Assembly (NCBI GenBank): GCA_977030845.1
Contig: OZ365113.1
Location: 26,412,001 to 26,476,000, forward strand
Direction: 5' to 3'
DNA: 64,000 bases
Source of the DNA: Fimbriosthenelais zetlandica
Lineage: Eukaryota
The number at the start of each line of letters is the position of its first letter. Within the stretch, counting starts at the first letter, position 1. The notes beneath the pieces are model-generated. The model did no database searches. It was not told the origin of the DNA and worked only from the letters and a program-made list of their open reading frames with translations. Of the stretch, positions 1 through 17,964 are shown one piece after another. Both the position numbers and the translations under genes were made by a program.

Positions 1-597
1 TCTGCCAGATTCTTCGCCCCCTCTCTTTTCCTATTCTCATTTTACCTTGCCCTCCCACATTAGAACAAGTGATGGAGAAGGTTCTCACGGTATTATTTCT
101 TGTTCATAAATCACAGAAAGCGTGGAAGGGAAGTTCTGAGAGAGAGAAAGAGGAAAATAATTCTTCCGAAATTCTTCTCAAAGTGAGCCATCTCGTAGGG
201 TGATAAAATTAAAGATCTAAAAATGATTTAATATTACCAAAATAAATGTTAACTTCTCAATACTTATCTCTATGAATATAAATAATATAATGAAAGCGCT
301 TTGTATTGCGACTTTCTTAGTACAGGTCTATATATATTTAACTTGATGTCTCCAACGTAATTCCAATCACAATTGTCCAGTATCTTGCAATTATAATTAA
401 GATTACCAAGACTATGGTGAAAACCAAGTATATAAGAACCATCGCTAGAAATTAAGAATAATAAATGGTTCTCTTACTAAAATAGCTGAGAAATACCTGA
501 CTGAACTTTAAGCCACTACATTCACTGACACTGGAGCAGGGCAAAGACAATTACAGTTCATTAAGATTAATTTGTCAATTATTTTGCTATTTTCCAG

Positions 598-3500
598 GCT
601 GACAAAGAGAACCACATACTTCACGTTATTGACACCGGTGTCGGTATGACTAAAGACGAGCTGGTGAATAACCTCGGAACTATAGCCAAGTCAGGAACCA
701 GCGAGTTCCTCCAGAAGGCGGGACAGACCTCTACCGAGTCTGAGACCAGCGACCTCATCGGCCAGTTTGGAGTGGGCTTCTACTCTACTTTCTTGAGTAA
801 GTGAAATCTAAAATGATTTAAAAAAAAAATAAGGCTCAGATCCCTTAGATTGCTTGGTGCTTTTTGCACTCAAATCTGTAAGCCCACAAAAAACTTTTGG
901 CCCCTCTGGACGTTAGCAGCCTTGTATCTGTAATTTCTCTTTAATACTGGCATATTCAGCGTATATTGACAAACTTAATGAGGCAATAATGTTGTCTTTC
1001 AGTTGCTGACCGTGTGATTGTTTCCTCTAAGCACAATGATGACGACCAGTATATCTGGGAGTCGGACGCGGACTCTTTCTCTGTTACCCGTGACCCCCGT
1101 GGTAACACTCTTGGACGTGGTACTCAGATCAGGTAAATTTATTTCCAAGTTTTTGAACTAAAAGGATGGGAATAAATTATTTCTTAGGGAATAGGAAATA
1201 TTGTGATTCGTTTTCATTGAACTCCCATTTATCTATCCCTTTAAAACTTACTTTTAGGAAATAATTTGCATGTATTTTCCCTGTGAAATGTGTTGTAGCA
1301 ACCGATTTTAACGCAGCATTTTGACTCAAACCTGATCTTGTTTTTTTTCAGTTTGCACTTGAAGGAAGAAGCTCACGACTATCTGGAGCAGAACACCATC
1401 AAGGACCTGATCAAGAAGTACTCGCAGTTCATCAATTTCAACATTTATCTGTGGGACAGCAAGGTATGTTTTCAGTTACTTACTCCTGCGGCTTTGTATA
1501 GAAATCTATATAAAAATCGCGTCGTTATATTAGCCGCAGGCCCCGATTTTTTTTGAAAAAGTCCCGGCTTATACACCGGCAAGTACGGTAATGCATTCCA
1601 CCTTCAACTTAACATTAATTTATTTGTATTTAACATATATTTCTAATTTTGTCGTGTGTAGACGGAGCAGGTAGAAGAGCCCATTGAGGACGAGGAAGCC
1701 ACAGACGAGCCTGAGACGGAGGACGAGGAGGAGGAGGAAGACGAGGCTAAGGTGGAGGAGGAAGAGGACAAGCCTAAAACAAAGACAGTAGACCGGACCA
1801 CCTGGGACTGGGTACTCGTCAACGACAACAAACCCATCTGGACGCGCAAGTAAGTATAAATTTATGATTTTTTTGTTTGATAAAATCTTAGCGACTTTTA
1901 TTGAGTTAATATAACTTTAAAATAATCCAAAACTTAGTCTGTGTCAACCCTTAGTATTTCTATGCTAGGGTCATTTAAAGTTTCTTGAAAAAAGTTACAT
2001 TATCCGTGGCACATACTTACGGATCCCCCACCATTTTCTCTGTCTCCAGGCATAGTGAAATCACTGACGACGAGTACAATGAATTCTACAAGAGCTTCGC
2101 GCACGATTCTAATGAGCCCCTGGCTCATACCCACTTTGTGGCCGAGGGAGAGGTGACCTTCCGCTCCATCCTTTATGTGCCTGACGCCTCCCCTAGCGAC
2201 ATGTTCCAGAGTTACGGTAAGAAGTACGACTTCATCAAGATGTACGTGCGCCGAGTGTTCATCACGGATAACTTTGAGGACATGATGCCCAAGTATCTGT
2301 CATTCGTCAAGGGAGTGGTGGACTCTGATGATCTGCCTCTCAACGTGTCACGTGAGACTCTACAGCAGCACAAGCTGCTCAAGGTGATCAAGAAGAAGCT
2401 GGTGAGGAAGACGCTGGATATGATCAAGAAGATTGGCAAGGAAGATTACGAGAAGTTCTGGAAGGAATACAGCACAAAGTAAGTCCCAAGTTCTTATGCA
2501 TGGTAGTCCGATAGGAAAATTTTTGGGTGTCGAACCCTGAATCCTTTATATTCGTATGTTTATTCGATCTTATTACCATATCAGATGGAATAAGTCACTT
2601 TCCATTTGATTTGCCATTGACCTAGACTCCTGTAATGTTCTAGAAAAAATCTAAAAGAAAAAAAATCTTCTACAGTGTACTGGAATACCTGTTATACTCC
2701 TGGAAATGTCCTAGAAATATGATGAAAATGATTGTCCTGTTACCATTGACCGAAAAGATAACTTTTTAGGATAAAATCGAGTAAACTTTCACATCGCTAG
2801 ACTTGCTCATATTCACCTTTGCCTGGTTCTCCATTACAGCATCAAACTTGGTGTGATTGAGGACCATTCTAACCGAACACGTCTTGCCAAGCTTCTGCGC
2901 TTCTACTCGTCTAACTCTGACACCGACCAGACCTCTCTGGCCGACTATGTGGAGCGCATGAAGGAGAAACAGGAGCACATTTACTTGATGGCCGGCAGCT
3001 CACGTGACGAGGTGGAGAAGTCGCCATTTGTAGAACGCCTGCTGAAGAAGGGCTACGAGGTGCTCTTCCTCATAGAACCCGTCGACGAATACTGTATCCA
3101 GGTGCGTACATAAATAAACTTTGCTTTAGCAGGGCTCAAAATATTGGCAAATTATTGTACGGAATTGTTCCGGAATAAATGCACATAGAAAGAGCCCCCA
3201 GCTGAAAATCATACGAGAAACTTGAGTAATCAAGAGTGTGAGCTGGCATTCACCCATAACAAGCTCTATACAAATTCTAACTAACAAAAATAAAAAAAAT
3301 AAGTAGAGCATACTTCAGGAATTTGGGATCACTTAAAAAAATCCAGTACTTCTCCTGTTAACTGTTACACGGATATTTTACACTCGGTGAGATTAACAGA
3401 TTATTCTAATAACAACTTTTTCCATCTCAGGCTCTACCAGAGTACGAATCCAAAAAGTTCCAGAACGTGGCCAAGGAAGGTCTGAAGCTGGACCAGTCAG

Positions 3501-6060
3501 AGAAGGCCAAGGAGCACAAGGAACAGCTGGAGAAGGACTTTGAGCCACTGACTAACTGGCTGAAGGACGAGGCACTGAAGGAGAAGATAGAGAAGGCGGT
3601 GGTTTCTGAGCGCCTGTCTAGCTCACCCTGTGCCCTCGTGGCCTCGTCGTACGGGTGGTCGGGTAACATGGAGAGGATCATGAGGGCTCAGGCCTACCAG
3701 AAACAACAGGACCCTTCACAAAAGTACGTCCATTTACTGTATTTACAGAAATAACAAAAACTGATTTTACCAGCAGATACTTAGTGTCGCTTAGTGCTAC
3801 CAGGTACCATTAAAAAGTTGGCACAGGTTTTTCAAGAAAATCAAAAGCCAGCCATGTATCCCTGGATCTGGATCTGGAATGTTAGTTGGTAAATTCCCAT
3901 ATTAAATTATATGTTGGGATGTCACGCCTGGGATATCCCCACTGAGATCCATGAAAATGAACTATTGCTGATATTCGAGAGCTGATATTTTGTGCCGACC
4001 CCCGCTCCCAATATTGTGAAACGACCCCTTTATCATACTTGATTTTTGTCCATTTCAGTTACTACGCGAACCAGAAGAAAACCCTGGAGATCAACCCCCG
4101 CCATCCTCTGATCAAGGAGTTACGTAACCGTGTAGAGAAGGATAAGGAGGACCAGACGACCGTCGACCTGGCCACCGTCCTGTTTGAGACAGCCACACTC
4201 CGCTCTGGTTATAACATCAAGGACTCGGCCACCTACGCCGACCGCATCGAGAGGATGCTACGTCTCTCCATGGACGTCGCCCTCGATGAACAAGTGAGTT
4301 CTTTTGGCTCTATGTACTTTAGTTTTGGCTCACTGGATGTTTGTTTTGGCTCAAAGAAGCTTAGTTTTGGCTCAAAGTAGCTTAGTTTTGGCTCAAAGAA
4401 GCTTAGTGTTGGCTCAAAGAAGCTTAGTTTTGGCTCAAAGAATATTATCTTTGGCTCAAGGAATATCGTTTTTGTCTCAAAGAAGCTTGGTTTGGGCTCA
4501 ATGGAATTCAGTTGTGGCCTAAAGAAAATGTTAGGTTCAGTGGAGCTTAAGTTTGTCCCAATGTATTACATAAAACTCCCTCAAACTGTTCATATTCCCT
4601 TCCATAATTATACTTCAACCTTAGAAAAATGCTTAACGTTATCATAAGCAATGCAGGGCCCCTGACTCCCTGAACATGTTGAATTTTACAAATTGCGACA
4701 TTTCCGTCTGCAGGTGGAGGAGGATCCATTTGAGGTTGAAGAAGAAGCGGAGGAGGACGAGGAAGGAGAGGAGGAAGAGGTAGATGCTGAAGAGGGGGAA
4801 GAGGATGAACCTGCTGGAGAAGATTCTACTGAAGATGAAGCAGCCAAGGTAAGAGCTGATGATAATATGATGTACACAACCCAAATATATCGACATTTGC
4901 TAATCGTGTGGGTGTGCGTGCAAGGCATAATATTTATTACCTACATCATAACAATTATTATAACATTTGATCTCAAGGACACATTTTTTTAAAAGTTTTA
5001 ACCATTTTAAGATCAACCATTTTCATTTTAGAACCGCTTATCCACCAAAAATTTTATGGAATTTTGAATTTATATTTTATCCTAAGTAGATCTACCAGAA
5101 ATTTTTAATTTCAAAACTATAAAGTACAACGAAGTAAGACTTTAGATAATTTTCTCGTTCTTTATTGCTGCTGTAGATCTTTAACGCAATATTATAGATT
5201 CGTTAGTCCTTTGGAGTATTTTGACTAAATTAATTCATCAAAGCTGTCAATGACACCTAAAAAACATACAAAGACAATAATTCTCTAATCGCATGGTTTG
5301 ATAGTTACTGCTGAAGAGTTGTGGATTTAATTTTTGTTGTTCTTGAGACACCGTGCCTCTCGCGCGGTAAGATCTCACATTTTCTTGTTTGCTGAATGAC
5401 GTTTGACCAGAACCAATACCCGATATCAGCTTCCTATGCCTCTCAAAGTTGGCTCTCCAAGGATCCTCAGAGCTTTCCCATGTTGCCTATTTCAACTTTT
5501 AAAATTTATTATTTTAAGAATAAAGATGATCATCTTCAAGTAACTGAAGGGTTTTTTGAAGATTTAGAAAAAATGAGTTCTCAAAGTTAGGACAGGCAAG
5601 GGTGCTTTGCGAAGCGTTATAGTGCATGTGTGCATTCACTTTAGCCCTGCAAAACTAGAGGCGGTGCGAGGATGAAAAACTATCCTCAAAATCCTAGTAG
5701 CAGCGTCCGTAACTCTGAAAGAAACCATAATAATTTATGAATCAATCTTTCACAGTTATTTTTTCAAGCTGCACCCAGTTACTTTGAGAATGCCTTTCTT
5801 TGAGAACTTAATCATAAAGTATTAAGCATTTTTCTTGCAAGTTACTAACAAATTCCCCGTTCCCCTGTTTGTGAGCATTTGACTTGTGAGGTCATTGGAA
5901 GAAAGCAATAGGAGCAATAGCGCCACTTGTGACAGGTAAGGGAAGCTGGTCTTCAGGTAGAGGAAATGGTCAACTATATGAGAGGATAAAAAACACATAC
6001 TTACAGAAGTGCCTGGGTTGTTTTTGTTTGCAGAAGGAGGAAGATCATGATGAGTTGTGA
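598..6060 (+). CDS. HSP90B1: Endoplasmin / GRP94 (ER HSP90 paralogue), 5'-partial, 10 exons in window
   Basis: Hand-spliced GT-AG exons 598-796, 1003-1132, 1352-1463, 1662-1849, 2050-2478, 2840-3101, 3431-3723, 4059-4293, 4714-4848, 6034-6060 keep one frame (661 codons plus the terminal exon). HSP90 signatures: [28 protein letters not shown], acidic linker, [25 protein letters not shown]. The C-terminal HDEL marks the ER paralogue. Upstream exons lie outside the window. Confidence 0.97.
3190..3300 (-). repeat. Dispersed repeat family A, copy 1 (HSP90B1 intron)
   Basis: agagcccccagctgaaaatc...caagagtgtgagctgg(c/t)attcacccataaca(a/g)gctctata recurs at about 49620-49712 in the same orientation and inverted at about 47545-47640. 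Confidence 0.8.
4300..4520. repeat. 21-bp minisatellite (aagaagcttagttttggctca), about 10-11 degenerate copies, in HSP90B1 intron
   Basis: Directly visible tandem units, most homogeneous in the centre. Explains the shadow ORF 4304-4522 (LAQRSLV repeats). Confidence 0.9.
6034..6060 (+). CDS. HSP90B1: Canonical terminal micro-exon of endoplasmin (KEEDHDEL*)
   Basis: Acceptor tttttgtttgcag at 6021-6033, then AAG GAG GAA GAT CAT GAT GAG TTG TGA. Phase 0 matches the donor at 4848. AATAAA hexamers follow near 6970 and 7039. Confidence 0.93.
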   Translation, partial: KEEDHDEL

Positions 6061-8265
6061 TGACGTACATATGATGACGTACCTATATCACCATGACAGC
6101 GTGGACTTTGATACGACTGTCATGTCACGTCGAGAATGAATGTGGTCTTAAGGACGAAGCGATCCGAAGAATTTGCATCCCAAAGTAGTTGATCTGCACA
6201 TGCACAGAGAAAATATCATTGACATTACTCTAGAGTCTGGACATTGTTCCAAAAAATAATCTGTGATGTGCTCACGATAGTCTGGTCCTATAGGCTTTGT
6301 ATGTCTATGTATAGGCCTTCATGCTATCAGTTTGAAACATGGTTTCAAGGTTCAACATCTGAAACCCGATCATTACATTCCCTGTGGAAATTCTCCGGGA
6401 TCACTCACAAATATTATGTAAAAAAAAAAAAAAAAAGAAATGTATATTATTTATCACTGAGCCTCACAGTCTGTGTAGGTGTCAGTTATTCCATTCCATA
6501 GAAGGGAAGCTGTCGTGGCACGTTTTGTGTAGTGACTCTGTATTCACAGCGTGGATGGCTTGTTTAGGCGTGTGAGATAGAGGGTGGGTCTGCTTAAAAT
6601 TTAAACAGTCCTTATGACCACCATTCAGCTTTAAAAGAAAATCAGTCCATTTTTCTTGTTACGTGTGGGGGAATTTAGAGTGTGGGGGGGAAGGGTAGCT
6701 CACAGAGGGAGAGACGCGCTGGTTTACTTGTGATTTGACACAAGATAACTTAATGCAGTCTCATCCAAAATATGAAGGGGAAAAAAATTAGGGAAACATT
6801 CCAGTTGTGAATGAGGTATGTTGCTTTGGTTTGTTTGTTTTTTTGTTTCAAGAATATTGATAAAAAAAAATCAGTTATGTCTGGAGAAATTGACGTTTGG
6901 ATGAATGAGATTTCATATCGCTTAATGTGCAGAAAAGGTACGAAAGAAATTCATTGCATCGTTCTCAGAAATAAATTACATATATGGTCAGAAGGAAGAA
7001 GCGCTGGCGATAGAAACTCGTGTAGGTATGAAAGTGAAAATAAAGAATGTTTCTATTTATATTAAATTGGTCTTTTTAATGACTTGTTACTACATTTTAT
7101 GGCCTAAAGCAGGCGGAGAAAAACGTGTGTAAAAAAACAAAAAGAAATGGAATACCCCGAAAATTGTGGAAATTGCCAGCTTGAGTTGGATGTTGGTTTT
7201 CACGTGATTATAGAGAAAAAAATGGCTTTATTCGAAATTGTTTGGAGGGGTTTCAGTCTTTGAACTTTAAGTTTTCTTAATTTCCAACCCAAAGCAATAT
7301 CAATATAACAATTTATTCTGGGTTTGCACGATAATTAAATATCTATTCATTTCTATGGGTGCAAAAATACAATAACAAGTGACCGTACCTCGGGCAGGTG
7401 TGGGTAGGTGGTATGGCCCAAGGTCTGAGGGTACATGGAAAGATGTCCAGAAGGCAAGGGACATCCGTCCACCCTCAGTCAGAGGGCTATACCACCTACC
7501 CAGACCTGCCCGATGTCAGTTCTAAATGCTATGCATATTCCTACCGTTCATAGTAATCTGCCGAAGGCTGTATCAAATGCAAAACTAAAGATAAAGAGAG
7601 TAGTGAGGGAGAAAGTCAGTTTGGACAGGAGACACAAGTCCACATGGAGACAGATGTTGATAAATGACAGTATACAAGTGTAGACATAAAGATGGTACAA
7701 CACAATGTGACAAGACAGATAGTAGGGAGAGTGCTCGGGGAGAGAATTCCAGCACGATGCTGTGGAGTAGCATGGGGCTCAGTGATTAGGCACAGGGGTT
7801 TAACTAATTCTCTTGTGCTTGATGGATCATACATGTAGAGTTAGGTTTTCCGTCGGCGAGCGGGGAAATATTGAGACTATTGAGGAGGAGATAGGGCCTA
7901 AAAATGAGCTGCTCTTATGCCATGAATGCCAGCTGCTCGCCATGAGGTTCAGGTAACGTAACTTATTACTCATGGATTTATAGCGTGTTATAGAACTGAT
8001 AAATGAAGGTAATAGAAGAGCGCGGCCAAAGGAAACGTTAAATTAGACAGTCAAAAACTATCTGAATTCACAAAAAGTGAAGGTAAGGAATTAAAATATG
8101 CATGGAGTTGATATTGCTACTGTTTCACATTGTGTGAGTTTAATTACCTAGTATCCTATCCTACTATTAATGTATGAATATAAAAATCACATGTCATGAA
8201 GTCTCAGTCAGTTTTTAAACAATGGTGCACAAAATTATTAATCTAATGTTTAATATTCTATCCAG

Positions 8266-11200
8266 GAAACCTGTTCTTGGTGTAGAAGAAAGCTAATGGC
8301 AGCTCCCGAAGAAACAAGAAAGAAACCCAACACTGTATTGAAACAAAGTCATCATAAAAGAGGCAAGGTTCCAGCAGGGGCAGACCCGCGAGTTGACATA
8401 GACAAAGACGGACTTCCTGACTTCATGGATGAAGATGATGATGGCGACGGCATTCCAGACTACCTAGATGAAGATGCTGACGACAATGGACTCTTGGATA
8501 AATACGAGGACGATGATGGAGATGGTATTCCAGATTACCTAGATATTGATGATGATGGGGATGGCATTCCAGATGATAAAGACAAAATACATGACGTTCC
8601 TGGATTTGGGCCTGTAGATGACATCAAAGACACAGATGGTGATGGCATACCAGATCACCATGACGACGATGACGATGGGGACGGTATTCCTGATTCCATG
8701 GAGGTAGATACAGATGGAGATGGTATCCCTGACTACCTAGATGATGACGATGATGGAGACGGTATTCCAGATCACCTTGACAACGATGATGATGGTGATG
8801 GTATTCCTGATGATCAGGAAGATAAAGATGGGGATGGCATCCCAGACCATCTAGATGATGATGACGATGGGGATGGTATTCCAGATGATGCTGAAATCGA
8901 CACAGATGGAGATGGTATCCCTGACTACTTGGATGATGACGATGATGGAGATGGTATTCCAGATCACCTTGACAACGATGATGATGGTGATGGAATTCCT
9001 GATGATCAGGAAGACAAAGATGGGGATGGCATCCCAGACCATCTAGATGATGATGACGATGGAGATGGTATTCCAGATGACCATGAAATCGACACAGATG
9101 GAGATGGTATCCCTGACTACCTAGATGATGACGATGATGGAGACGGTATTCCAGATCACCTTGACAACGATGATGATGGTGATGGTATTCCAGATGATCA
9201 GGAAGACAAAGATGGGGATGGCATCCCAGACCATCTAGATGATGATGACGATGGGGATGGTATTCCAGATGATGCTGAAATCGACACAGATGGAGATGGT
9301 ATCCCTGACTACTTGGATGATGACGACGATGGAGATGGTATTCCAGATCACCTTGACAACGATGATGATGGTGATGGTATTCCTGATGACCAAGAAGATG
9401 AAGATGGGGATGGCATCCCAGACCATCTAGATGATGATGACGATGGGGATGGTATTCCAGATGACCATGAAATCGACACAGATGGAGATGGTATCCCTGA
9501 CTACTTGGATGATGACGATGATGGCGATGGTATTCCAGATCACCTTGACAACGATGATGATGGTGATGGAATTCCAGATGATCAGGAAGACAAAGATGGG
9601 GATGGCATCCCAGACCATCTAGATGATGATGACGATGGGGATGGTATTCCAGATGATGCTGAAATTGACACAGATGGAGACGGTATCCCTGACTACTTAG
9701 ATGATGACGATGATGGAGATGGTATTCCAGATCACCTTGACAACGATGATGATGGTGATGGTATTCCTGACGACCAAGAAGATGAAGATGGGGATGGCAT
9801 CCCAGACCATCTAGATGATGATGACGATGGTGATGGTATTCCAGATGACCATGAAATCGACACAGATGGAGATGGTATCCCTGACTTCTTGGATGACGAC
9901 GATGATGGAGATGGTATTCCAGATCACCTTGACAACGATGATGATGGTGATGGTATTCCAGATGACAAGGAAGACAAAGATGGGGATGGTATCCCTGACC
10001 ATCTAGATGATGATGACGATGGTGATGGTATTCCAGATGATGCTGAAATCGACACAGATGGAGATGGTATCCCTGACTACTTGGATGATGACGATGATGG
10101 AGATGGTATTCCAGATCACGTTGACAACGATGATGATGGTGATGGTATTCCAGACGATCAGGAAGATGAAGATGGGGATGGTATCCCTGACCATCTAGAT
10201 GATGATGACGATGGAGATGGTATTCCAGATGACCATGAAATCGATACAGATGGAGATGGTATCCCTGACTACTTGGATGATGACGATGATGGAGATGGTA
10301 TTCCAGATCACCTTGACAACGATGATGATGGTGATGGTATTCCTGATGATCAGGAAGATAAAGATGGGGATGGCATCCCAGACCATCTAGATGATGATGA
10401 CGATGGAGATGGTATTCCAGATGACCATGAAATCGACACAGATGGAGATGGTATCCCTGACTACCTAGATGATGACGATGATGGAGACGGTATTCCAGAT
10501 CACCTTGACAACGATGATGATGGTGATGGTATTCCTGATGATCAGGAAGACAAAGATGGGGATGGCATCCCAGACCATCTAGATGATGATGACGATGGAG
10601 ATGGTATTCCAGATGACCATGAAATCGACACAGATGGAGATGGTATCCCTGACTACCTAGATGATGACGATGATGGAGACGGTATTCCAGATCACCTTGA
10701 CAACGATGATGATGGTGATGGTATTCCAGATGATCAGGAAGACAAAGATGGGGATGGCATCCCAGACCATCTAGATGATGATGACGATGGGGATGGTATT
10801 CCAGATGATGCTGAAATCGACACAGATGGAGATGGTATCCCTGACTACTTGGATGATGACGATGATGGAGATGGTATTCCAGATCACCTTGACAACGATG
10901 ATGATGGTGATGGTATTCCAGACGATCAGGAAGATGAAGATGGGGATGGCATCCCAGACCATCTAGATGATGATGACGATGGGGATGGCATTCCAGATGA
11001 CCATGAAATCGATACAGATGGAGATGGTATACCTGACTACTTGGATGATGACGATGATGGAGATGGTATTCCAGATCACCTTGACAACGATGATGATGGT
11101 GATGGTATTCCAGATGATCAGGAAGACAAAGATGGGGATGGCATCCCAGACCATCTAGATGATGATGACGATGGGGATGGTATTCCAGATGATACTGAAA

Positions 11201-14200
11201 TCGACACAGATGGAGATGGTATCCCTGACTACTTGGATGATGACGATGATGGAGATGGTATTCCAGATCACCTTGACAACGATGATGATGGTGATGGTAT
11301 TCCAGACGATCAGGAAGATGAAGATGGGGATGGCATCCCAGACCATCTAGATGATGATGACGATGGAGATGGTATTCCAGATGACCATGAAATCGATACA
11401 GATGGAGATGGTATCCCTGACTACTTGGATGATGACGATGATGGAGATGGTATTCCAGATCACCTTGACAACGATGATGATGGTGATGGTATTCCAGATG
11501 ATCAGGAAGACAAAGATGGGGATGGTATCCCAGACCATCTAGATGATGATGACGATGGGGATGGTATTCCAGATGATGCTGAAATTGACACAGATGGAGA
11601 TGGTATCCCTGACTACTTGGATGATGACGATGATGGAGATGGTATTCCAGATCACCTTGACAACGATGATGATGGTGATGGTATTCCAGACGATCAGGAA
11701 GATGAAGATGGGGATGGCATCCCAGACCATCTAGATGATGATGACGATGGGGATGGCATTCCAGATGACCATGAAATCGATACAGATGGAGATGGTATCC
11801 CTGACTACTTGGATGATGACGATGATGGAGATGGTATTCCAGATCACCTTGACAACGATGATGATGGTGATGGTATTCCAGATGATCAGGAAGACAAAGA
11901 TGGGGATGGTATCCCTGACCATCTTGATGATGATGACGATGGGGATGGTATTCCAGATGATGCTGAAATCGACACAGATGGAGATGGTATCCCTGACTAC
12001 TTGGATGATGACGATGATGGAGATGGTATTCCAGATCACCTTGACAACGATGATGATGGTGATGGTATTCCAGACGATCAAGAAGATGAAGATGGGGATG
12101 GCATCCCAGACCATCTAGATGATGATGACGATGGGGATGGTATTCCAGATGACCATGAAATCGATACAGATGGAGATGGTATCCCTGACTACTTGGATGA
12201 TGACGATGATGGAGATGGTATTCCAGATCACCTTGACAACGATGATGATGGTGATGGTATTCCAGACGACAAGGAAGACAAAGATGGGGATGGTATCCCA
12301 GACCATCTAGATGATGATGACGATGGGGATGGTATTCCAGATGATGCTGAAATTGACACAGATGGAGATGGTATCCCTGACTACTTGGATGATGACGATG
12401 ATGGAGATGGTATTCCAGATCACCTTGACAACGATGATGATGGTGATGGTATTCCTGATGACCAAGAAGATGAAGATGGGGATGGCATCCCAGACCATCT
12501 AGATGATGATGACGATGGAGATGGTATTCCAGATGACCATGAAATCGACACAGATGGAGATGGTATCCCTGACTACTTGGATGATGACGATGATGGAGAT
12601 GGTATTCCAGATCACCTTGACAACGATGATGATGGTGATGGTATTCCAGATGATCAGGAAGACAAAGATGGGGATGGCATCCCAGACCATCTAGATGATG
12701 ATGACGATGGGGATGGTATTCCAGATGATGCTGAAATTGACACAGATGGAGATGGTATCCCTGACTACTTGGATGATGACGATGATGGAGATGGTATTCC
12801 AGATCACCTTGACAACGATGATGATGGTGATGGTATTCCTGATGACCAAGAAGATGAAGATGGGGATGGCATCCCAGACCATCTAGATGATGATGACGAT
12901 GGGGATGGTATTCCAGATGACCATGAAATCGACACAGATGGAGATGGTATCCCTGACTACTTGGATGACGACGATGATGGAGATGGTATTCCAGATCACC
13001 TTGACAACGATGATGATGGTGATGGTATTCCAGATGATCAGGAAGACAAAGATGGGGATGGCATCCCAGACCATCTAGATGATGATGACGATGGGGATGG
13101 TATTCCAGATGACCATGAAATCGACACAGATGGAGATGGTATCCCTGACTACCTAGATGATGACGATGATGGAGACGGTATTCCAGATCACCTTGACAAC
13201 GATGATGATGGTGATGGTATTCCAGACGATCAGGAAGATGAAGATGGGGATGGCATCCCAGACCATCTAGATGATGATGACGATGGGGATGGTATTCCAG
13301 ATGACCATGAAATCGATACAGATGGAGATGGTATCCCTGACTACTTGGATGATGACGATGATGGAGATGGTATTCCAGATCACCTTGACAACGATGATGA
13401 TGGTGATGGTATTCCAGATGATCAGGAAGACAAAGATGGGGATGGCATCCCAGACCATCTAGATGATGATGACGATGGGGATGGTATTCCAGATGATGCT
13501 GAAATCGACACAGATGGAGATGGTATCCCTGACTACTTAGATGATGACGATGATGGAGATGGTATTCCAGATCACCTTGACAACGATGATGATGGTGATG
13601 GTATTCCAGACGATCAAGAAGATGAAGATGGGGATGGCATCCCAGACCATCTTGACAATGATGATGATGGGGATGGTATTCCAGATGACCATGAAATCGA
13701 CACAGATGGAGATGGTATCCCTGACTACTTGGATGAAGACGATGATGGAGATGGTATTCCAGATCACCTTGACAACGATGATGATGGTGATGGTATTCCA
13801 GATGATCAGGAAGACAAAGATGGGGATGGTATCCCAGACCATCTAGATGATGATGACGATGGGGATGGTATTCCAGATGACCATGAAATCGACACAGATG
13901 GAGATGGTATCCCTGACTACTTGGATGATGACGATGATGGAGATGGTATTCCAGATCACCTTGACAACGATGATGATGGTGATGGAATTCCAGATGATCA
14001 GGAAGACGAAGATGGGGATGGCATCCCAGACCATCTAGATGATGATGACGATGGGGATGGTATTCCAGATGACCATGAAATCGATACAGATGGAGATGGT
14101 ATCCCTGACTATTTGGATGATGACGATGATGGAGATGGTATTCCAGATCACCTTGACAACGATGATGATGGTGATGGTATTCCTGATGACAAGGAAGACA

Positions 14201-17200
14201 AAGATGGGGATGGTATCCCAGACCATCTAGATGATGATGACGATGGTGATGGTATTCCAGATGACGCTGAAATCGACACAGATGGAGATGGTATCCCTGA
14301 CTACCTAGATGATGACGATGATGGTGATGGTATTCCAGATCACCTTGACAACGATGATGATGGTGATGGAATTCCAGATGATCAGGAAGACGAAGATGGG
14401 GATGGCATCCCAGACCATCTAGATGATGATGACGATGGAGATGGTATTCCAGATGACCAAGAAATTGACACAGATGGAGATGGTATCCCTGACTACTTGG
14501 ATGATGACGACGATGGAGATGGTATTCCTGATCACCTTGACAACGATGATGATGGTGATGGTATTCCAGATGATGCTGAAATCGACACAGATGGAGATGG
14601 TATCCCCGATCATTTAGATGATGACGATGATGGAGACGGTATTCCAGATCACCTTGACAACGATGATGATGGTGATGGTATTCCAGATGATCAGGAAGAC
14701 AAAGATGGGGATGGCATCCCAGACCATCTAGATGATGATGACGATGGGGATGGTATTCCAGATGACCAAGAAATTGACACAGATGGAGATGGTATCCCTG
14801 ACTACTTGGATGATGACGACGATGGAGATGGTATTCCAGATCACCTTGACAACGATGATGATGGTGATGGTATTCCTGATGACCAAGAAGATGAAGATGG
14901 GGATGGTATCCCAGACCATCTAGATGATGATGACGATGGGGATGGTATTCCAGATGACCATGAAATCGACACAGATGGAGATGGTATCCCTGACTACTTG
15001 GATGATGACGATGATGGAGATGGTATTCCAGATCACCTTGACAACGATGATGATGGTGATGGTATTCCTGATGACAAGGAAGACAAAGATGGGGATGGCA
15101 TCCCAGACCATCTAGATGATGATGACGATGGGGATGGTATTCCAGATGACCAAGAAATTGACACAGATGGAGATGGTATCCCTGACTACTTGGATGATGA
15201 CGATGATGGAGATGGTATTCCAGATCACCTTGACAACGATGATGATGGTGATGGTATTCCTGATGACCAAGAAGATGAAGATGGGGATGGCATCCCAGAC
15301 CACCTAGATGATGATGACGATGGGGATGGTATTCCAGATGACCATGAAATCGACACAGATGGAGATGGTATCCCTGACTACTTGGATGATGACGATGATG
15401 GCGATGGTATTCCAGATCACCTTGACAACGATGATGATGGTGATGGAATTCCAGATGATCAGGAAGACAAAGATGGGGATGGCATCCCAGACCATCTTGA
15501 TGATGACGATGATGGCGATGGTATTCCAGATGATGCTGAAATTGACACAGATGGAGATGGTATCCCTGACTACTTGGATGATGACGATGATGGAGATGGT
15601 ATTCCAGATCACCTTGACAACGATGATGACGGTGATGGTATTCCTGATGACCAAGAAGATGAAGATGGGGATGGCATTCCAGACCATCTAGATGATGATG
15701 ACGATGGGGATGGTATTCCAGATGACCAAGAAATTGACACAGATGGAGATGGTATCCCTGACTACTTGGATGATGACGATGATGGAGATGGTATTCCAGA
15801 TCACCTTGACAACGATGATGATGGTGATGGAATTCCAGATGACCAAGAAGATGAAGACGGGGATGGCATCCCAGACCATCTTGACAATGATGACGATGGG
15901 GATGGTATTCCAGACGATCAAGAAATTGACACGGATGGAGATGGTATCCCTGACTACTTGGATGATGACGATGATGGAGATGGTATTCCAGATCACCTTG
16001 ACAACGATGATGATGGTGATGGTATTCCTGATGACAAGGAAGACAAAGATGGGGATGGCATCCCAGACCATCTAGATGATGATGACGATGGGGATGGTAT
16101 TCCAGATGACCAAGAAATTGACACAGATGGAGACGGTATCCCTGACTACTTGGATGATGACGATGATGGAGATGGTATTCCAGATCACCTTGACAACGAT
16201 GATGATGGTGATGGTATTCCTGATGACCAAGAAGACAAAGATGGGGATGGCATCCCAGACCATCTTGACAATGATGACGATGGGGATGGTATTCCAGATG
16301 ACCAAGAAATCGACACAGATGGAGATGGTATCCCTGACTACTTGGATGATGACGATGATGGAGATGGTATTCCAGATCACCTTGACAACGATGATGATGG
16401 TGATGGTATTCCAGATGACAAGGAAGACAAAGATGGGGATGGCATCCCTGACCATCTAGATGATGACGACGATGGGGATGGTATTCCAGATGACCAAGAA
16501 ATTGACTCAGATGGTGATGGCATTCCTGATCATTTAGATAATGACGATGATGGAGATGGTATTCCAGATCACCTTGACGATGATGATGATGGTGATGGTA
16601 TTCCTGACGACAAAGAAGACAAAGATGGGGATGGTATCCCAGACCGTTTTGACAACGATGACGATGGGGATGGTATTCCAGACGATCAAGAAATTGACAC
16701 AGATGGAGATGGTATCCCTGACTACTTGGATAATGACGATGATGGAGATGGTATTCCAGATCACCTTGACAATGATGATGATGGTGATGGTATTCCTGAC
16801 GACAAAGAAGACAAAGATGGGGATGGCATCCCAGACCATCTTGATGATGACGATGATGGAGATGGTATTCCAGATGACCAGGAAATCGATTCAGATGGTG
16901 ATGGTATCCCTGATCATTTAGATAATGACGATGATGGAGATGGTATTCCAGATCACCTTGACAAAGATGATGATGGTGATGGTATTCCAGATGACAAAGA
17001 AGACAAAGATGGGGATGGTATCCCTGATCATATTGATCATGATGATGACGGGGATGGTATTCCTGATGACATGTCCATCACAGATTTTCCACCACAATTG
17101 AATAAGGATGCAGACCATGATGGTATTCCTGATTATCTTGATGACGATGATGACAACGATGGCATTCCTGACTACCTTGATGAGGACGATGATAACGATG

Positions 17201-17964
17201 GAGTTCTTGACATTGATGAAAAATACTGGAAGGACTTCGACGGGGATGGAATTCCTGACTGGGAAGATGACGATGATGATAATGATGGAATTCCAGACGA
17301 TGAAGATAGTGACGATGATAATGATGGAATACCTGACCACCTGGAATCTTTGGGACCTGACGCTTGTTTAATAGCGAAATGTGAGGAAGAGGAACCTGCA
17401 GAATCCCTTGTAAGCAGGGTAATTAAATCACTTAAAAGTATGATTTACCTTGACGATGATGAAGAGTTTGAGCCAGAGCCCGAACCCGAAGAGGATTTAG
17501 ATCTTTGGGAAATGATCACATCTTTCATTTTGGGAGATGATGACAAGGTAGGAGAATCAGACTCTTCTAGTAGTAATGCTAATCGCGAATCAGAAGGACA
17601 CACATATAAAGCCACAAAGCGGAAGCTCCTCAGCATCAGTTTAGATCAAAATAATAACAAAGCTAAAAATATCAAAGACACTGTGATTCCAAAACAGAAA
17701 CCAGCAGGGAAGGGGGACTCAAAAAATTTAAAACAAAAACAAATTAAGTCTACTGTGAAACAGACCTCAAAAGTGGAACAAAATGATGAGGATGCAACTG
17801 TGGAGGTAGAGGAAGATTCAGAGACAGTCACAGCTGCAGAGGAAGAGTCGAAGACAAATATTCCAGCTCTTATAAGATATTACATAGACCAAACAAAGGA
17901 GCATCTTCATCACATATTCCATAAAATAATTAATCATATTGGCTTCGAGGAGGAGACTCGGTGA
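8266..17964 (+). CDS. Giant Asp-rich protein or exon (about 3,230 aa) of TSP type-3-like DGDGIPD Ca2+-binding repeats; candidate alternative last exon of HSP90B1
   Basis: Uninterrupted 9.7-kb ORF (first ATG at 8296). The frame is open back to the acceptor ttctatccag|G at 8265/8266, with branch-point-like CTAAT at 8243-8247 and an in-frame TAA at 8251-8253. Variation between repeat units is mostly synonymous (gat/gac, ggt/gga/ggg/ggc, cca/cct), which indicates selection on the protein. Coding status is well supported, but its attachment to HSP90B1 is inferred. Confidence 0.85.
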   Translation, partial: ETCSWCRRKLMAAPEETRKKPNTVLKQSHHKRGKVPAGADPRVDIDKDGLPDFMDEDDDGDGIPDYLDEDADDNGLLDKYEDDDGDGIPDYLDIDDDGDGIPDDKDKIHDVPGFGPVDDIKDTDGDGIPDHHDDDDDGDGIPDSMEVDTDGDGIPDYLDDDDDGDGIPDHLDNDDDGDGIPDDQEDKDGDGIPDHLDDDDDGDGIPDDAEIDTDGDGIPDYLDDDDDGDGIPDHLDNDDDGDGIPDDQEDKDGDGIPDHLDDDDDGDGIPDDHEIDTDGDGIPDYLDDDDDGDGIPDHLDNDDDGDGIPDDQEDKDGDGIPDHLDDDDDGDGIPDDAEIDTDGDGIPDYLDDDDDGDGIPDHLDNDDDGDGIPDDQEDEDGDGIPDHLDDDDDGDGIPDDHEIDTDGDGIPDYLDDDDDGDGIPDHLDNDDDGDGIPDDQEDKDGDGIPDHLDDDDDGDGIPDDAEIDTDGDGIPDYLDDDDDGDGIPDHLDNDDDGDGIPDDQEDEDGDGIPDHLDDDDDGDGIPDDHEIDTDGDGIPDFLDDDDDGDGIPDHLDNDDDGDGIPDDKEDKDGDGIPDHLDDDDDGDGIPDDAEIDTDGDGIPDYLDDDDDGDGIPDHVDNDDDGDGIPDDQEDEDGDGIPDHLDDDDDGDGIPDDHEIDTDGDGIPDYLDDDDDGDGIPDHLDNDDDGDGIPDDQEDKDGDGIPDHLDDDDDGDGIPDDHEIDTDGDGIPDYLDDDDDGDGIPDHLDNDDDGDGIPDDQEDKDGDGIPDHLDDDDDGDGIPDDHEIDTDGDGIPDYLDDDDDGDGIPDHLDNDDDGDGIPDDQEDKDGDGIPDHLDDDDDGDGIPDDAEIDTDGDGIPDYLDDDDDGDGIPDHLDNDDDGDGIPDDQEDEDGDGIPDHLDDDDDGDGIPDDHEIDTDGDGIPDYLDDDDDGDGIPDHLDNDDDGDGIPDDQEDKDGDGIPDHLDDDDDGDGIPDDTEIDTDGDGIPDYLDDDDDGDGIPDHLDNDDDGDGIPDDQEDEDGDGIPDHLDDDDDGDGIPDDHEIDTDGDGIPDYLDDDDDGDGIPDHLDNDDDGDGIPDDQEDKDGDGIPDHLDDDDDGDGIPDDAEIDTDGDGIPDYLDDDDDGDGIPDHLDNDDDGDGIPDDQEDEDGDGIPDHLDDDDDGDGIPDDHEIDTDGDGIPDYLDDDDDGDGIPDHLDNDDDGDGIPDDQEDKDGDGIPDHLDDDDDGDGIPDDAEIDTDGDGIPDYLDDDDDGDGIPDHLDNDDDGDGIPDDQEDEDGDGIPDHLDDDDDGDGIPDDHEIDTDGDGIPDYLDDDDDGDGIPDHLDNDDDGDGIPDDKEDKDGDGIPDHLDDDDDGDGIPDDAEIDTDGDGIPDYLDDDDDGDGIPDHLDNDDDGDGIPDDQEDEDGDGIPDHLDDDDDGDGIPDDHEIDTDGDGIPDYLDDDDDGDGIPDHLDNDDDGDGIPDDQEDKDGDGIPDHLDDDDDGDGIPDDAEIDTDGDGIPDYLDDDDDGDGIPDHLDNDDDGDGIPDDQEDEDGDGIPDHLDDDDDGDGIPDDHEIDTDGDGIPDYLDDDDDGDGIPDHLDNDDDGDGIPDDQEDKDGDGIPDHLDDDDDGDGIPDDHEIDTDGDGIPDYLDDDDDGDGIPDHLDNDDDGDGIPDDQEDEDGDGIPDHLDDDDDGDGIPDDHEIDTDGDGIPDYLDDDDDGDGIPDHLDNDDDGDGIPDDQEDKDGDGIPDHLDDDDDGDGIPDDAEIDTDGDGIPDYLDDDDDGDGIPDHLDNDDDGDGIPDDQEDEDGDGIPDHLDNDDDGDGIPDDHEIDTDGDGIPDYLDEDDDGDGIPDHLDNDDDGDGIPDDQEDKDGDGIPDHLDDDDDGDGIPDDHEIDTDGDGIPDYLDDDDDGDGIPDHLDNDDDGDGIPDDQEDEDGDGIPDHLDDDDDGDGIPDDHEIDTDGDGIPDYLDDDDDGDGIPDHLDNDDDGDGIPDDKEDKDGDGIPDHLDDDDDGDGIPDDAEIDTDGDGIPDYLDDDDDGDGIPDHLDNDDDGDGIPDDQEDEDGDGIPDHLDDDDDGDGIPDDQEIDTDGDGIPDYLDDDDDGDGIPDHLDNDDDGDGIPDDAEIDTDGDGIPDHLDDDDDGDGIPDHLDNDDDGDGIPDDQEDKDGDGIPDHLDDDDDGDGIPDDQEIDTDGDGIPDYLDDDDDGDGIPDHLDNDDDGDGIPDDQEDEDGDGIPDHLDDDDDGDGIPDDHEIDTDGDGIPDYLDDDDDGDGIPDHLDNDDDGDGIPDDKEDKDGDGIPDHLDDDDDGDGIPDDQEIDTDGDGIPDYLDDDDDGDGIPDHLDNDDDGDGIPDDQEDEDGDGIPDHLDDDDDGDGIPDDHEIDTDGDGIPDYLDDDDDGDGIPDHLDNDDDGDGIPDDQEDKDGDGIPDHLDDDDDGDGIPDDAEIDTDGDGIPDYLDDDDDGDGIPDHLDNDDDGDGIPDDQEDEDGDGIPDHLDDDDDGDGIPDDQEIDTDGDGIPDYLDDDDDGDGIPDHLDNDDDGDGIPDDQEDEDGDGIPDHLDNDDDGDGIPDDQEIDTDGDGIPDYLDDDDDGDGIPDHLDNDDDGDGIPDDKEDKDGDGIPDHLDDDDDGDGIPDDQEIDTDGDGIPDYLDDDDDGDGIPDHLDNDDDGDGIPDDQEDKDGDGIPDHLDNDDDGDGIPDDQEIDTDGDGIPDYLDDDDDGDGIPDHLDNDDDGDGIPDDKEDKDGDGIPDHLDDDDDGDGIPDDQEIDSDGDGIPDHLDNDDDGDGIPDHLDDDDDGDGIPDDKEDKDGDGIPDRFDNDDDGDGIPDDQEIDTDGDGIPDYLDNDDDGDGIPDHLDNDDDGDGIPDDKEDKDGDGIPDHLDDDDDGDGIPDDQEIDSDGDGIPDHLDNDDDGDGIPDHLDKDDDGDGIPDDKEDKDGDGIPDHIDHDDDGDGIPDDMSITDFPPQLNKDADHDGIPDYLDDDDDNDGIPDYLDEDDDNDGVLDIDEKYWKDFDGDGIPDWEDDDDDNDGIPDDEDSDDDNDGIPDHLESLGPDACLIAKCEEEEPAESLVSRVIKSLKSMIYLDDDEEFEPEPEPEEDLDLWEMITSFILGDDDKVGESDSSSSNANRESEGHTYKATKRKLLSISLDQNNNKAKNIKDTVIPKQKPAGKGDSKNLKQKQIKSTVKQTSKVEQNDEDATVEVEEDSETVTAAEEESKTNIPALIRYYIDQTKEHLHHIFHKIINHIGFEEETR
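8660..17050 (+). repeat. Coding tandem array, 192-bp unit (64 aa), about 43 full units plus one 117-bp short unit, with a 384-bp super-period in parts
   Basis: Unit = DGDGIPDYLDDDD / DGDGIPDHLDNDD / DGDGIPDDQED[K/E] / DGDGIPDHLDDDD / DGDGIPDD[A/H/Q]EIDT. Shadow ORFs in the track recur every 192 bp, with one 309-bp step (14423 to 14732). Confidence 0.97.

What the first reader, a model, noticed from the sequence alone, without database searches (positions are those of the whole stretch)
8660..17050. About 220 cysteine-free TSP type-3-like DGDGIPD motifs in a 13/64/128-aa hierarchy
Seen: five DGDGIPD motifs per 64 aa (13+13+12+13+13), 30 of 64 residues Asp, no Cys. Over long stretches the units alternate QEDK..DDA with QEDE..DDH, giving a 128-aa super-repeat. 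His recurs at fixed positions. Established: DxDxDGxxD motifs in thrombospondin/COMP type-3 repeats wrap Ca2+, but animal TSPs have only a few such repeats and they are disulfide-stabilised. Cys-free tandem versions are more familiar from bacterial surface proteins. Inference: a Ca2+-folded linear 'wire' with a capacity of hundreds of ions per chain, and the periodic His could add Zn or pH sensitivity.
Basis: partly seen in the sequence, partly recalled or inferred. Interest (0 to 1): 0.75.

Follow-up and report, generated by a model that had tools for sequence, protein, structure and literature searches.

The report
Giant calcium-binding tail exon of endoplasmin
A single 9.7-kb exon just downstream of the ER chaperone gene endoplasmin (GRP94) encodes a 3,232-residue, 43% aspartate chain of 224 calcium-binding motifs. 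It has the same layout as in liver and blood flukes, where gene models join it to endoplasmin in place of the ER-retention tail, so it is probably a huge calcium-storing form of the chaperone.

Summary
One open frame holds 224 exact DGDGIPD motifs spaced 13/13/13/13/12, giving 64-aa units. A 128-aa super-repeat is also visible in the DNA. There is no Cys in the array, and repeat copies show strong purifying selection (pN/pS 0.08).

The motif is the thrombospondin type-3 Ca2+-binding motif in its Cys-free "bacterial" flavour. Pfam TSP3_bac passes its cut-off and animal TSP_3 does not. The AF2 model's best PDB matches are COMP and TSP type-3 repeats.

The new point is context. The exon starts at a splice acceptor (8265|8266), not at the ATG. 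The ten codons before the ATG read ETCSWCRRKL. The exon lies 2.2 kb downstream of the HDEL exon of endoplasmin, in the same phase. Gene models from about 15 trematode species fuse endoplasmin to a homologous Asp-rich TSP3 region that begins with CPTCRRLL. Paragonimus and Clonorchis DNA shows the same layout: penultimate exon, KDEL mini-exon, then the CxxC exon.

My best reading (about 0.58) is an alternative last exon that replaces HDEL with a polyanion binding hundreds of Ca2+. No RNA run was listed for this genome, so the splice is inferred.

The scan had already noted the alternative-last-exon idea on this same stretch (s1-228805). I found no paper that describes it.

The parts
595..4296 (+). 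Endoplasmin (HSP90B1/GRP94) middle and C-terminal exons. The first exons lie upstream of the window, including a signal-peptide exon MARKFLFLGLLALLVIS|gtgagt about 9.9 kb upstream.
   Evidence: tblastn with Clonorchis endoplasmin residues 137-745 gives 43-64% identity, exon by exon. Signal-peptide exon at L014:102-152.
4714..4848 (+). Penultimate endoplasmin coding exon (acidic tail, VEEDPFEV...EDEAAK). Its donor is AAG|gtaaga, phase 0.
   Evidence: Sequence read directly.
6034..6060 (+). Canonical last coding exon, KEEDHDEL-stop (ER-retention signal), behind a strong acceptor (gtttttgtttgcag). Its 3'UTR follows, with AATAAA at 6970 and 7039.
8264..8265 (+). Candidate 3' splice site: AG, with a CTAAT branch-point-like site about 25 nt upstream. 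It is phase 0 and in frame with the giant ORF. An in-frame TAA at 8251-8253 blocks any contiguous upstream extension.
8266..17964 (+). Giant terminal exon: 3,232 codons plus TGA, 346 kDa, pI about 4, 1,542 acidic against 83 basic residues.
8272..8295 (+). CSWCRRKL, a conserved CxxC(R)(R)x(L) motif that lies upstream of the first ATG (8296).
   Evidence: The pattern occurs once in all six frames of the window. The same motif stands at the start of the homologous exon in trematodes (CPTCRRLL/F) and in a third species (ESCEICEIKL).
8401..8814 (+). Irregular N-terminal TSP3-like motifs.
8815..16995 (+). Regular array of 42 units of 64 aa (192 nt), each with five DGDGIPD motifs. It has a 128-aa super-repeat and a 39-aa insert at 14575-14691.
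16996..17337 (+). Degenerate terminal motifs, including the aromatic-bearing ...YWKDFDGDGIPDWEDDDDDNDGIPD, which is conserved in orthologues.
17338..17964 (+). Non-repeat tail. It contains a Cys pair (17365-17382), a helix at 17401-17448, the EEDLDLWEMITSFILG helix (17488-17535), RKLLSISL plus a Lys-rich stretch (17620 onward), an acidic patch, and a C-terminal amphipathic helix (17860-17946).
   Evidence: AF2 gives pLDDT 53, three helices and otherwise disorder. The motifs are shared with P0031, P0003 and the trematode C-termini.

Best explanation
The DGDGIPD array is the body of a 9.7-kb terminal exon (8266-17964). I think this exon is an alternative last exon of the endoplasmin (GRP94/HSP90B1) gene.

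Splicing the phase-0 donor at 4848 to the acceptor at 8265|8266, instead of to the HDEL mini-exon at 6034, would give a protein of about 4,000 residues. That protein would have the endoplasmin signal peptide and chaperone body, then a CxxC junction, then about 230 Cys-free TSP type-3 Ca2+-binding motifs, then a short helical tail, and no HDEL.

Shown:
- The exon is coding and under purifying selection.
- It starts at an acceptor, not at the ATG.
- Its layout relative to endoplasmin is the same as in trematodes, whose gene models are fused.

Inferred:
- The splice itself.
- ER-lumen targeting.
- Binding of roughly one to two Ca2+ per motif, so a few hundred per chain. This would make the isoform a calsequestrin-like, low-affinity, high-capacity Ca2+ store or buffer tied to the chaperone.
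- Retention without HDEL. Possible routes are dimerisation with the HDEL isoform through the GRP94 C-terminal dimer interface, Ca2+-driven condensation, or the conserved cysteines.
For: Coding:
- The frame is open for 3,232 codons.
- Among 42 repeat copies pS is 0.216 and pN 0.018, a ratio of 0.084. 38 of 64 third positions vary, against 3 of 64 second positions.

The exon starts upstream of the ATG:
- ETCSWCRRKL lies between an AG acceptor and the ATG, with a stop just upstream.
- This CxxCRRxL pattern occurs once in 128,000 six-frame codons of the window.
- It is the first conserved element of the homologous exon in P. westermani (aaacag|TNQSCPTCRRLL), in C. sinensis (tacttcag|DEHHCPTCRRLF) and in a third species, which has no ATG there.

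Link to endoplasmin:
- The top homologues of the N-terminal 175 residues are trematode proteins carrying HATPase_c and HSP90 domains plus about 2,000 aa of Asp-rich TSP3-like repeats.
- Every endoplasmin longer than 1,575 aa in the database that carries an Asp-rich extension is from a trematode: Schistosoma (8 species), Paragonimus, Clonorchis, Opisthorchis, Calicophoron. Every one I checked has the CxxC junction except the Calicophoron model (cluster names).
- Genomic DNA of Paragonimus and Clonorchis shows a phase-0 donor, a 91-nt intron, a KDEL mini-exon, and then the CxxC exon 15-18 kb on. That is the window's layout.
- The C-terminal helices match: KIINHIGFEEE here against LKRIENIFGVEDD in Schistosoma.
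- No phase-0 first exon with a signal peptide was found between the HDEL exon and the acceptor.

Translation in relatives:
- S. mansoni Smp_030300 isoforms .3 and .4 (197 and 239.5 kDa) were found in the miracidium proteome with 20 peptides each and 1 unique peptide each (PMC4723143).
- A DDDDDGDGIPDSK peptide was found in an earthworm hydrolysate (PMC11547318).

Ca2+ motif:
- Pfam TSP3_bac passes its cut-off.
- COMP is hit at E 1.2e-7.
- The AF2 model of one 128-aa unit has pLDDT 82.7, and its best PDB matches are COMP, TSP-2, TSP-1 and a Capnocytophaga OmpA TSP3 region.
Against: - No RNA run was listed for this genome, so neither transcription nor the 4848-to-8266 junction was seen.
- The trematode fusions are gene models. 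I did not see a transcript spanning the junction, and the Logan members of the S. bovis cluster are genomic pieces.
- In a third species with a homologous exon (L009), no endoplasmin exon lies within about 36 kb upstream.
- No annelid or mollusc fusion model turned up.
- The acceptor's pyrimidine tract is weaker than that of the HDEL exon.
- Ca2+ binding, ER location and retention are all inferred.
Confidence: 0.58

Rival explanations
1. It is a separate gene kept next to endoplasmin. The giant exon would be spliced to its own, still unrecognised, upstream exon or exons under a separate promoter, and the trematode fusions would be gene-prediction artefacts that joined two phase-compatible neighbours.
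For:
- In the L009 species no endoplasmin exon lies within 36 kb upstream.
- The 15-18 kb gaps in trematodes leave room for hidden first exons.
- The earthworm peptide was assigned to an Owenia protein whose name (Ofus.G011730 protein) suggests no recognised HSP90 domain.
Against: - Adjacency, strand, order and phase are the same in an annelid-like genome and in flukes, which is unusual for unrelated neighbours.
- Fused models come from many independent annotations, some with named isoforms: Endoplasmin variant 2, Endoplasmin isoform 1, and Smp_030300.3/.4.
- No plausible first exon with a start codon, a signal peptide and a phase-0 donor lies in the 2.2 kb between the HDEL exon and the acceptor.
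Confidence: 0.27
2. Same gene structure, different role. Because the long form lacks HDEL, it would be secreted and act outside the cell as a Ca2+-binding matrix, mucus, cement or mineral-controlling polyanion, rather than as an ER store.
For: - The HDEL/KDEL exon is skipped in the long form.
- The S. mansoni protein is listed among the predicted secreted proteins of miracidia.
- Bacterial TSP3 proteins are surface or periplasmic.
- Extracellular Ca2+ (millimolar) would saturate such motifs.
Against: - That listing rests on a signal-peptide prediction, not on secretion being shown.
- Calsequestrin shows that luminal Ca2+ stores can be retained without KDEL (established knowledge, from memory).
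- GRP94 is a dimer, so a heterodimer with the HDEL form could be retained.
- Nothing in the sequence indicates matrix-binding domains.
Confidence: 0.25
3. It is a non-functional expansion: a coding-looking minisatellite in the 3' flank of endoplasmin that is not translated.
For: - Very high copy similarity (94% mean nucleotide identity).
- No RNA evidence.
Against: - pN/pS is 0.084 and the frame is unbroken over 9.7 kb despite about 6% nucleotide divergence between copies.
- The non-repeat head and tail motifs are conserved across phyla.
- A relative has an orthologous 3,048 + 347 aa ORF pair.
- Peptides were detected in relatives.
Confidence: 0.03

Closest known systems
Trematode 'endoplasmin' long gene models (S. 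mansoni Smp_030300/Smp_340630 at 1,743 and 2,126 aa; C. sinensis Endoplasmin at 2,863 aa and variant 2; P. westermani 'heat shock protein 90kDa beta' at 3,259 aa)
   Same: - CxxCRRxL at the start of the extension.
- Asp-rich DxDGDGIPD repeats.
- The RKLL motif followed by a Lys-rich stretch.
- The C-terminal amphipathic helix.
- The genomic order: penultimate exon, xDEL mini-exon, CxxC exon, all in phase 0.
   Different: - In flukes the extension is split into about 20 exons over 60-80 kb. It has 6-48 dispersed, degenerate motifs, about 18% Asp and 15-19 Cys.
- Here it is one exon with 224 near-identical motifs, 43% Asp, and no Cys in the array.
- The order of the Lys-rich module and the repeats differs.
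- The fused form is annotated in flukes. It is only inferred here.
Thrombospondin/COMP type-3 repeats (PDB 3fby, 1yo8, 1ux6)
   Same: - The DxDxDGxxDxxD Ca2+-wrapping motif.
- An irregular, helix-poor predicted fold.
- These are the best sequence and fold matches.
   Different: - TSP/COMP have only about 13 motifs.
- They are stabilised by disulfides and packed on a C-terminal lectin-like domain.
- The array here fails the Pfam TSP_3 cut-off.
- The genome has three canonical TSP_3 loci elsewhere.
Bacterial TSP3 repeats (Pfam PF18884; OmpA-like, T9SS and gliding-motility giant surface proteins; PDB 5wtl, 9n2d)
   Same: - Cys-free tandem DTDGDGIPDYLD-type motifs.
- The Pfam model passes its cut-off.
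- 45-55% identity over repeats.
   Different: - The bacterial proteins are prokaryotic surface or periplasmic proteins in which the repeats are linkers among Ig-like, OmpA or CHU_C domains.
- Here the array is an intron-bounded exon in an animal genome beside endoplasmin, and far longer and more regular.
Calsequestrin / histidine-rich Ca-binding protein (functional analogues, named from memory)
   Same: Very acidic, high-capacity luminal Ca2+ buffers that lack KDEL. HRC also has periodic His in acidic repeats.
   Different: There is no homology. Calsequestrin is three thioredoxin-like domains with 40-80 Ca2+. Here the chain is a linear array of defined Ca2+ loops, presumably attached to a chaperone.

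Membership tests
Animal thrombospondin type-3 repeat (Pfam TSP_3, PF02412) | DxDxDGxxDxxD Ca2+-binding motif | tested here: met
   224 exact DGDGIPD motifs preceded by D-x-D. Aligns to COMP repeats.
Animal thrombospondin type-3 repeat (Pfam TSP_3, PF02412) | Score at or above Pfam's gathering cut-off (25 bits) | tested here: not met
   13.8-19.4 bits on three segments. The own-genome search with PF02412 lists three other loci and not this one.
Animal thrombospondin type-3 repeat (Pfam TSP_3, PF02412) | Conserved cysteines forming disulfides within and between repeats | tested here: not met
   No Cys between residues 1 and 3023 of the ORF.
Animal thrombospondin type-3 repeat (Pfam TSP_3, PF02412) | Followed by the thrombospondin C-terminal lectin-like domain | tested here: not met
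   The tail has no Pfam hit apart from a weak TSP_3 match. AF2 gives three isolated helices at pLDDT 53.
Bacterial-type TSP3 repeat (Pfam TSP3_bac, PF18884) | Score at or above the gathering cut-off (25 bits), with a Cys-free tandem arrangement | tested here: met
   35.3 and 59.3 bits. Thousands of bacterial repeat proteins are hit.
Bacterial-type TSP3 repeat (Pfam TSP3_bac, PF18884) | Part of a prokaryotic surface or periplasmic protein | tested here: not met
   The window is eukaryotic. It has few long ORFs, a spliced endoplasmin gene, and belongs to a 447-Mb genome.
Endoplasmin long form (as modelled in trematodes) | Extension exon lies downstream of the xDEL terminal exon, on the same strand, with phase-0 donor and acceptor | tested here: met
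   Window. Paragonimus. Clonorchis.
Endoplasmin long form (as modelled in trematodes) | CxxC(R)(R)x(L) motif within 2-4 residues of the exon start | tested here: met
   ETCSWCRRKL against TNQSCPTCRRLL and DEHHCPTCRRLF. The pattern is unique in the window.
Endoplasmin long form (as modelled in trematodes) | Shared C-terminal module: last aromatic TSP3 motifs, an acidic patch, and an amphipathic helix ending G-(V/F)-E | tested here: met
   Alignment A2 and the C-termini listed. Similarity is short, so this is supportive and not decisive.
Endoplasmin long form (as modelled in trematodes) | An mRNA that joins the endoplasmin exons to the extension | not testable with these tools
   No sequencing run was listed, so read laying was unusable. 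The Logan cluster members are genomic.
High-capacity luminal Ca2+ buffer (calsequestrin-like, by function only) | Measured low-affinity, high-capacity Ca2+ binding and an ER/SR location | not testable with these tools
   Only composition (1,542 acidic residues, pI about 4) and motif homology are available.

The most novel reading that the evidence does not exclude
Endoplasmin/GRP94 has an ancient alternative isoform, shared by annelids and flatworms and so predating the split of these spiralian phyla. In it the ER-retention tail is exchanged for a Cys-free TSP3 polyanion. That would turn the chaperone into the main Ca2+ store of the secretory pathway, carrying hundreds of ions per chain. It would be retained in trans by dimerising with the HDEL isoform, or through the conserved junction cysteines. 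In this lineage the module has been expanded by 384-nt unequal crossing-over to 224 motifs.
Probability: 0.4. Interest if true: 0.8.

Novelty: new variant of a known kind. Interest (0 to 1): 0.7.

Why it matters
GRP94 is one of the most studied ER chaperones, and it is already known as a modest Ca2+ buffer. A conserved isoform that swaps its retention signal for a 350-kDa array of defined Ca2+ loops would have four consequences.

- It would be a new way of building a luminal or secreted Ca2+ store.
- It would link protein folding and Ca2+ handling in a single polypeptide.
- It would be relevant to fluke biology, since the same gene is listed as a drug target in S. mansoni (PMC9559072).
- The 64/128-aa unit would be a compact, disulfide-free, naturally optimised Ca2+-binding module for biophysics and materials work.

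If the splice turns out to be wrong, what remains is still the most extreme eukaryotic TSP3-type polyanion I could find. That is a narrower curiosity.

Tried and rejected
- RNA evidence: the look-up of sequencing runs on the tail (rna) and on 3900-8650 (any) listed no run (two attempts found the machine busy). Read laying therefore could not be used.
- Tail homologues: the search for homologous proteins on residues 3010-3222 found nothing. The ESM Atlas gave no usable hit.
- Exhaustive HMMER with the last 322 residues found only one protein covering the tail (P0031). The other hits matched the repeat part only and were mostly long multi-domain proteins; the ones I looked up were largely bacterial.
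- Endoplasmin upstream in the L009 species: I walked about 36 kb upstream in three steps and found no endoplasmin exon and no xDEL exon. This is inconclusive, not negative.
- S. bovis locus: not on record.
- Logan members of the S. bovis cluster, as possible transcripts: they read into introns (VNK|VS = gtaagt), so they are genomic.
- Independent first exon between 6062 and 8250: there are only short ATG-to-donor candidates without signal peptides.
- Literature: searches for endoplasmin with thrombospondin type 3, with Clonorchis, for Smp_340630, and for GRP94/calsequestrin/invertebrate found no description of the extension.
- Rejected reading, a true thrombospondin: no Cys, no TSP_C domain, below the Pfam cut-off.
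- Rejected reading, bacterial contamination: there is a spliced animal gene on the same strand 2 kb away, inside a 40.7-Mb contig.
- Complex prediction was not used, because no pairwise binding claim rests on it.


Full report
**1. The observation**

The window looks eukaryotic. It has only ten ORFs of 150 aa or more in 64 kb, and it lies in a 447-Mb assembly, on a 40.7-Mb contig.

ORF 8296-17964 (+) is open for 3,222 codons, while every other frame of the same stretch has 18-718 stops. Its product has 1,397 Asp (43%), 466 Gly, 122 His and two Cys, both outside the array.

There are 224 exact DGDGIPD motifs, or 230 with a looser pattern. They are spaced 13/13/13/13/12, which gives 64-aa units with 30 Asp each. 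TRF reports a 192-nt period with 43.4 copies at 92% match.

The proposed 128-aa super-repeat is real at the DNA level. In units 1-30, even lags are 96.7% identical and odd lags 94.7%. The alternation of QEDK..DDA with QEDE..DDH fades towards the 3' end, where DDQ variants take over.

The motifs extend a little beyond the stated coordinates, from 8401 to 17337.

**2. Is it coding?**

Among the 42 regular units, 38 of 64 third codon positions vary, against 11 first positions and 3 second positions. Pairwise Nei-Gojobori values are pS 0.216 and pN 0.018, a ratio of 0.084.

With about 6% nucleotide divergence between copies, an unbroken 9.7-kb frame and a ratio this low mean selection on the protein. 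This is not a neutral minisatellite.

A relative carries an orthologous tail protein (P0031, 54% identical, including the non-repeat tail). It is preceded on the same strand by a 3,048-aa ORF.

**3. What kind of motif?**

- Pfam TSP3_bac (PF18884) passes its cut-off at 35-59 bits against 25. The animal TSP_3 model does not, at 14-19 bits against 25.
- A 128-aa unit hits COMP (3fby) at E 1.2e-7 and thrombospondin-1 and -2 weakly.
- An AF2 model of the unit, built with a 26-row alignment, has pLDDT 82.7 and is almost all loop with short turns.
- Its best PDB matches by Foldseek are COMP, TSP-2 and TSP-1 type-3 repeats and the TSP3-like part of a Capnocytophaga OmpA. Probability is 0.9-1.0. TM-scores are low, as expected for a wire-like repeat.
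- The genome has three canonical TSP_3 loci elsewhere.

The array is therefore a Cys-free, "bacterial-flavoured" TSP3-type Ca2+ motif. It is not a thrombospondin.

In solved TSP/COMP structures, 13 motifs hold roughly 22-30 Ca2+ (from memory of the 1ux6, 1yo8 and 3fby papers). By analogy, 224-230 motifs would hold a few hundred ions. This is inference.

**4. Gene context, the main new point**

Endoplasmin (GRP94/HSP90B1) exons lie upstream on the same strand. A signal-peptide exon lies about 9.9 kb before the window.

The penultimate coding exon (4714-4848) ends ...EDEAAK|gtaaga in phase 0. The canonical last exon (6034-6060) reads KEEDHDEL-stop.

An earlier first-stage note on the same stretch (s1-228805) had suggested two alternative last exons. 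I tested that idea.

The giant frame is closed by TAA at 8251-8253. An acceptor-like tatccAG ends at 8265. The ten codons from 8266 to the ATG read ETCSWCRRKL. The pattern C-x-x-C-[RKE]-[RKI]-x-[LF] occurs once in all six frames of the window.

**5. Comparative evidence**

The best database matches to the first 175 residues are trematode proteins that carry HATPase_c and HSP90 domains plus about 2,000 residues of Asp-rich TSP3-like repeats.

A search designed to list every endoplasmin longer than 1,575 aa returned 15 proteins. Thirteen are from trematodes. The other two, from Trichuris and a stick insect, are mixed-domain models that look like obvious mis-fusions. The trematode models include:
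- S. mansoni 'putative endoplasmin', 1,743 and 2,126 aa
- S. japonicum 'Endoplasmin isoform 1'
- C. sinensis 'Endoplasmin' and 'Endoplasmin, variant 2'
- four Paragonimus species
- Opisthorchis and Calicophoron

In every trematode model I checked except the Calicophoron one, the endoplasmin acidic tail is followed by CPTCRRL(L/F).

In P. westermani genomic DNA the penultimate exon ends ...PKD|gtaagt. Ninety-one bases later a mini-exon encodes VSKPSDAKDEL-stop. The next modelled exon starts 15.3 kb on, at aaacag|TNQSCPTCRRLL.

C. sinensis is the same...PSDE|gtaagt, then VGEPSNAKDEL-stop, then tacttcag|DEHHCPTCRRLF 18 kb on.

The window therefore reproduces, in compact form, the order, strand, phases and junction motif seen in the fluke loci.

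The C-termini also correspond. There are last motifs with an aromatic residue, an acidic patch, and an amphipathic helix: KIINHIGFEEE here, LKRIENIFGVEDD in Schistosoma, VNRVLRWIENVVGVEN in Clonorchis. RKLL(S/A)(I/V) followed by a Lys-rich stretch is shared too.

A third species (P0003/L009, GC 33%) has tttcaag|ESCEICEIKL with no ATG. There too the exon cannot begin translation by itself.

**6. What this shows and what it does not**

Shown:
- The conserved CxxC codons lie upstream of the ATG and directly after an acceptor, so the exon needs an upstream coding exon.
- The nearest phase-compatible donor on the strand is endoplasmin's.
- The 2.2 kb between the HDEL exon and the acceptor contains no ATG-to-donor segment with a signal peptide.

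Not shown:
- The splice itself. No sequencing run was listed for this genome.
- I saw no transcript spanning the junction in flukes. Logan pieces in the S. bovis cluster are genomic.

Support from the literature is indirect. In the S. mansoni miracidium proteome, Smp_030300.3 (197 kDa) and .4 (239.5 kDa) each have 20 peptides and one unique peptide. Their database header reads 'Putative thrombospondin' (PMC4723143, main table and supplement). The HSP survey that renames the gene Smp_340630 does not mention the extension (PMC9559072).

A peptide DDDDDGDGIPDSK was found by LC-MS/MS in an Eisenia hydrolysate and assigned to an Owenia protein (PMC11547318). Other agents' notes call this genome 'probably annelid', which I did not test.

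Against a universal link, in the L009 species no endoplasmin exon lies within about 36 kb upstream.

**7. Mechanism**

My best reading (about 0.58) is that alternative use of the last exon gives two endoplasmins. One is the ordinary HDEL form. The other is a protein of about 4,000 residues in which HDEL is replaced by the polyanion.

With the endoplasmin signal peptide, the long form enters the ER, where millimolar Ca2+ would load the motifs. GRP94 is a C-terminal dimer and itself a low-affinity Ca2+ binder (established knowledge, from memory).

The long form could be retained in three ways: by pairing with the HDEL form, by Ca2+-dependent condensation as for calsequestrin, or through the conserved cysteines that bracket the array (CxxC at the junction, Cx4C at 17365-17382). 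All three are inferences.

The periodic His (2-3 per unit) could tune binding with pH or bind Zn2+. That is untested.

Rivals:
- a separate neighbouring gene whose first exon is unknown (0.27)
- the same protein, but secreted to act outside the cell (0.25; this is a question of function, not exclusive of the gene structure)
- a non-functional expansion (0.03)

**8. The tail**

AF2 on the last 247 residues gives pLDDT 53. There are three helices (17401-17448, 17488-17535, 17860-17946) in otherwise disordered sequence. No domain was recognised.

**9. Novelty**

The building blocks are known: TSP3 motifs, endoplasmin, and acidic luminal Ca2+ buffers. Fused fluke models already sit in public databases under names such as 'putative endoplasmin' and 'putative thrombospondin'.

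I found no paper that describes the extension, its conserved junction or the alternative-exon layout, and nothing for annelids. The extreme, near-perfect 224-motif single-exon array appears specific to this lineage.

I class it as a new variant of a known kind, with fairly high interest. The central splice remains to be seen in RNA.

Noticed in passing
L011:4594-4786 and L013:3588-3786: In Paragonimus westermani and Clonorchis sinensis the deposited 'endoplasmin' models skip an intact canonical KDEL mini-exon (VSKPSDAKDEL-stop / VGEPSNAKDEL-stop) that lies 91 nt after the penultimate exon. The ordinary ER-retained form seems to be missing from those annotations.
   Followed up: partly
P0117 (458 aa, MetaClust UPI0006985C84): An unrelated protein with a signal peptide and two similar flanking domains around about ten DGDGIPD-type motifs. 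The flanks look thioredoxin- or calsequestrin-like to the eye, but this was not tested. It may be a second eukaryotic family of luminal TSP3-type Ca2+ binders.
   Followed up: no
P0027 and its cluster (Anopheles spp., about 1,137 aa): Mosquito 'Major facilitator superfamily associated domain-containing' proteins carry TSP3-like DGDGIPD motifs inside a membrane protein.
   Followed up: no
window 14575-14691: A 39-aa (three-motif) irregular insert breaks the 64-aa register once, after unit 30. After it the unit variants change from DDA/DDH to DDQ, which suggests two expansion histories within the array.
   Followed up: partly
window 37305-38450 (+) and 42550-44556 (-): A Tudor-domain ORF (50 bits, above the cut-off) and a long single-exon ORF with a sub-threshold 7tm_1 match (27 bits against 30.5).
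   Followed up: no
G000:C11:9759377-9759712, C25:7044664-7045889, C1:26540550-26542499: Three canonical TSP_3 loci (Cys-containing thrombospondin-type repeats, above the Pfam cut-off) elsewhere in the genome.
   Followed up: no
PMC4723143 supplement file 2: The S. mansoni v5 gene Smp_030300 is headed 'Putative thrombospondin' in the protein database, while Blast2GO names it endoplasmin. The naming conflict itself reflects the two-part architecture.
   Followed up: partly
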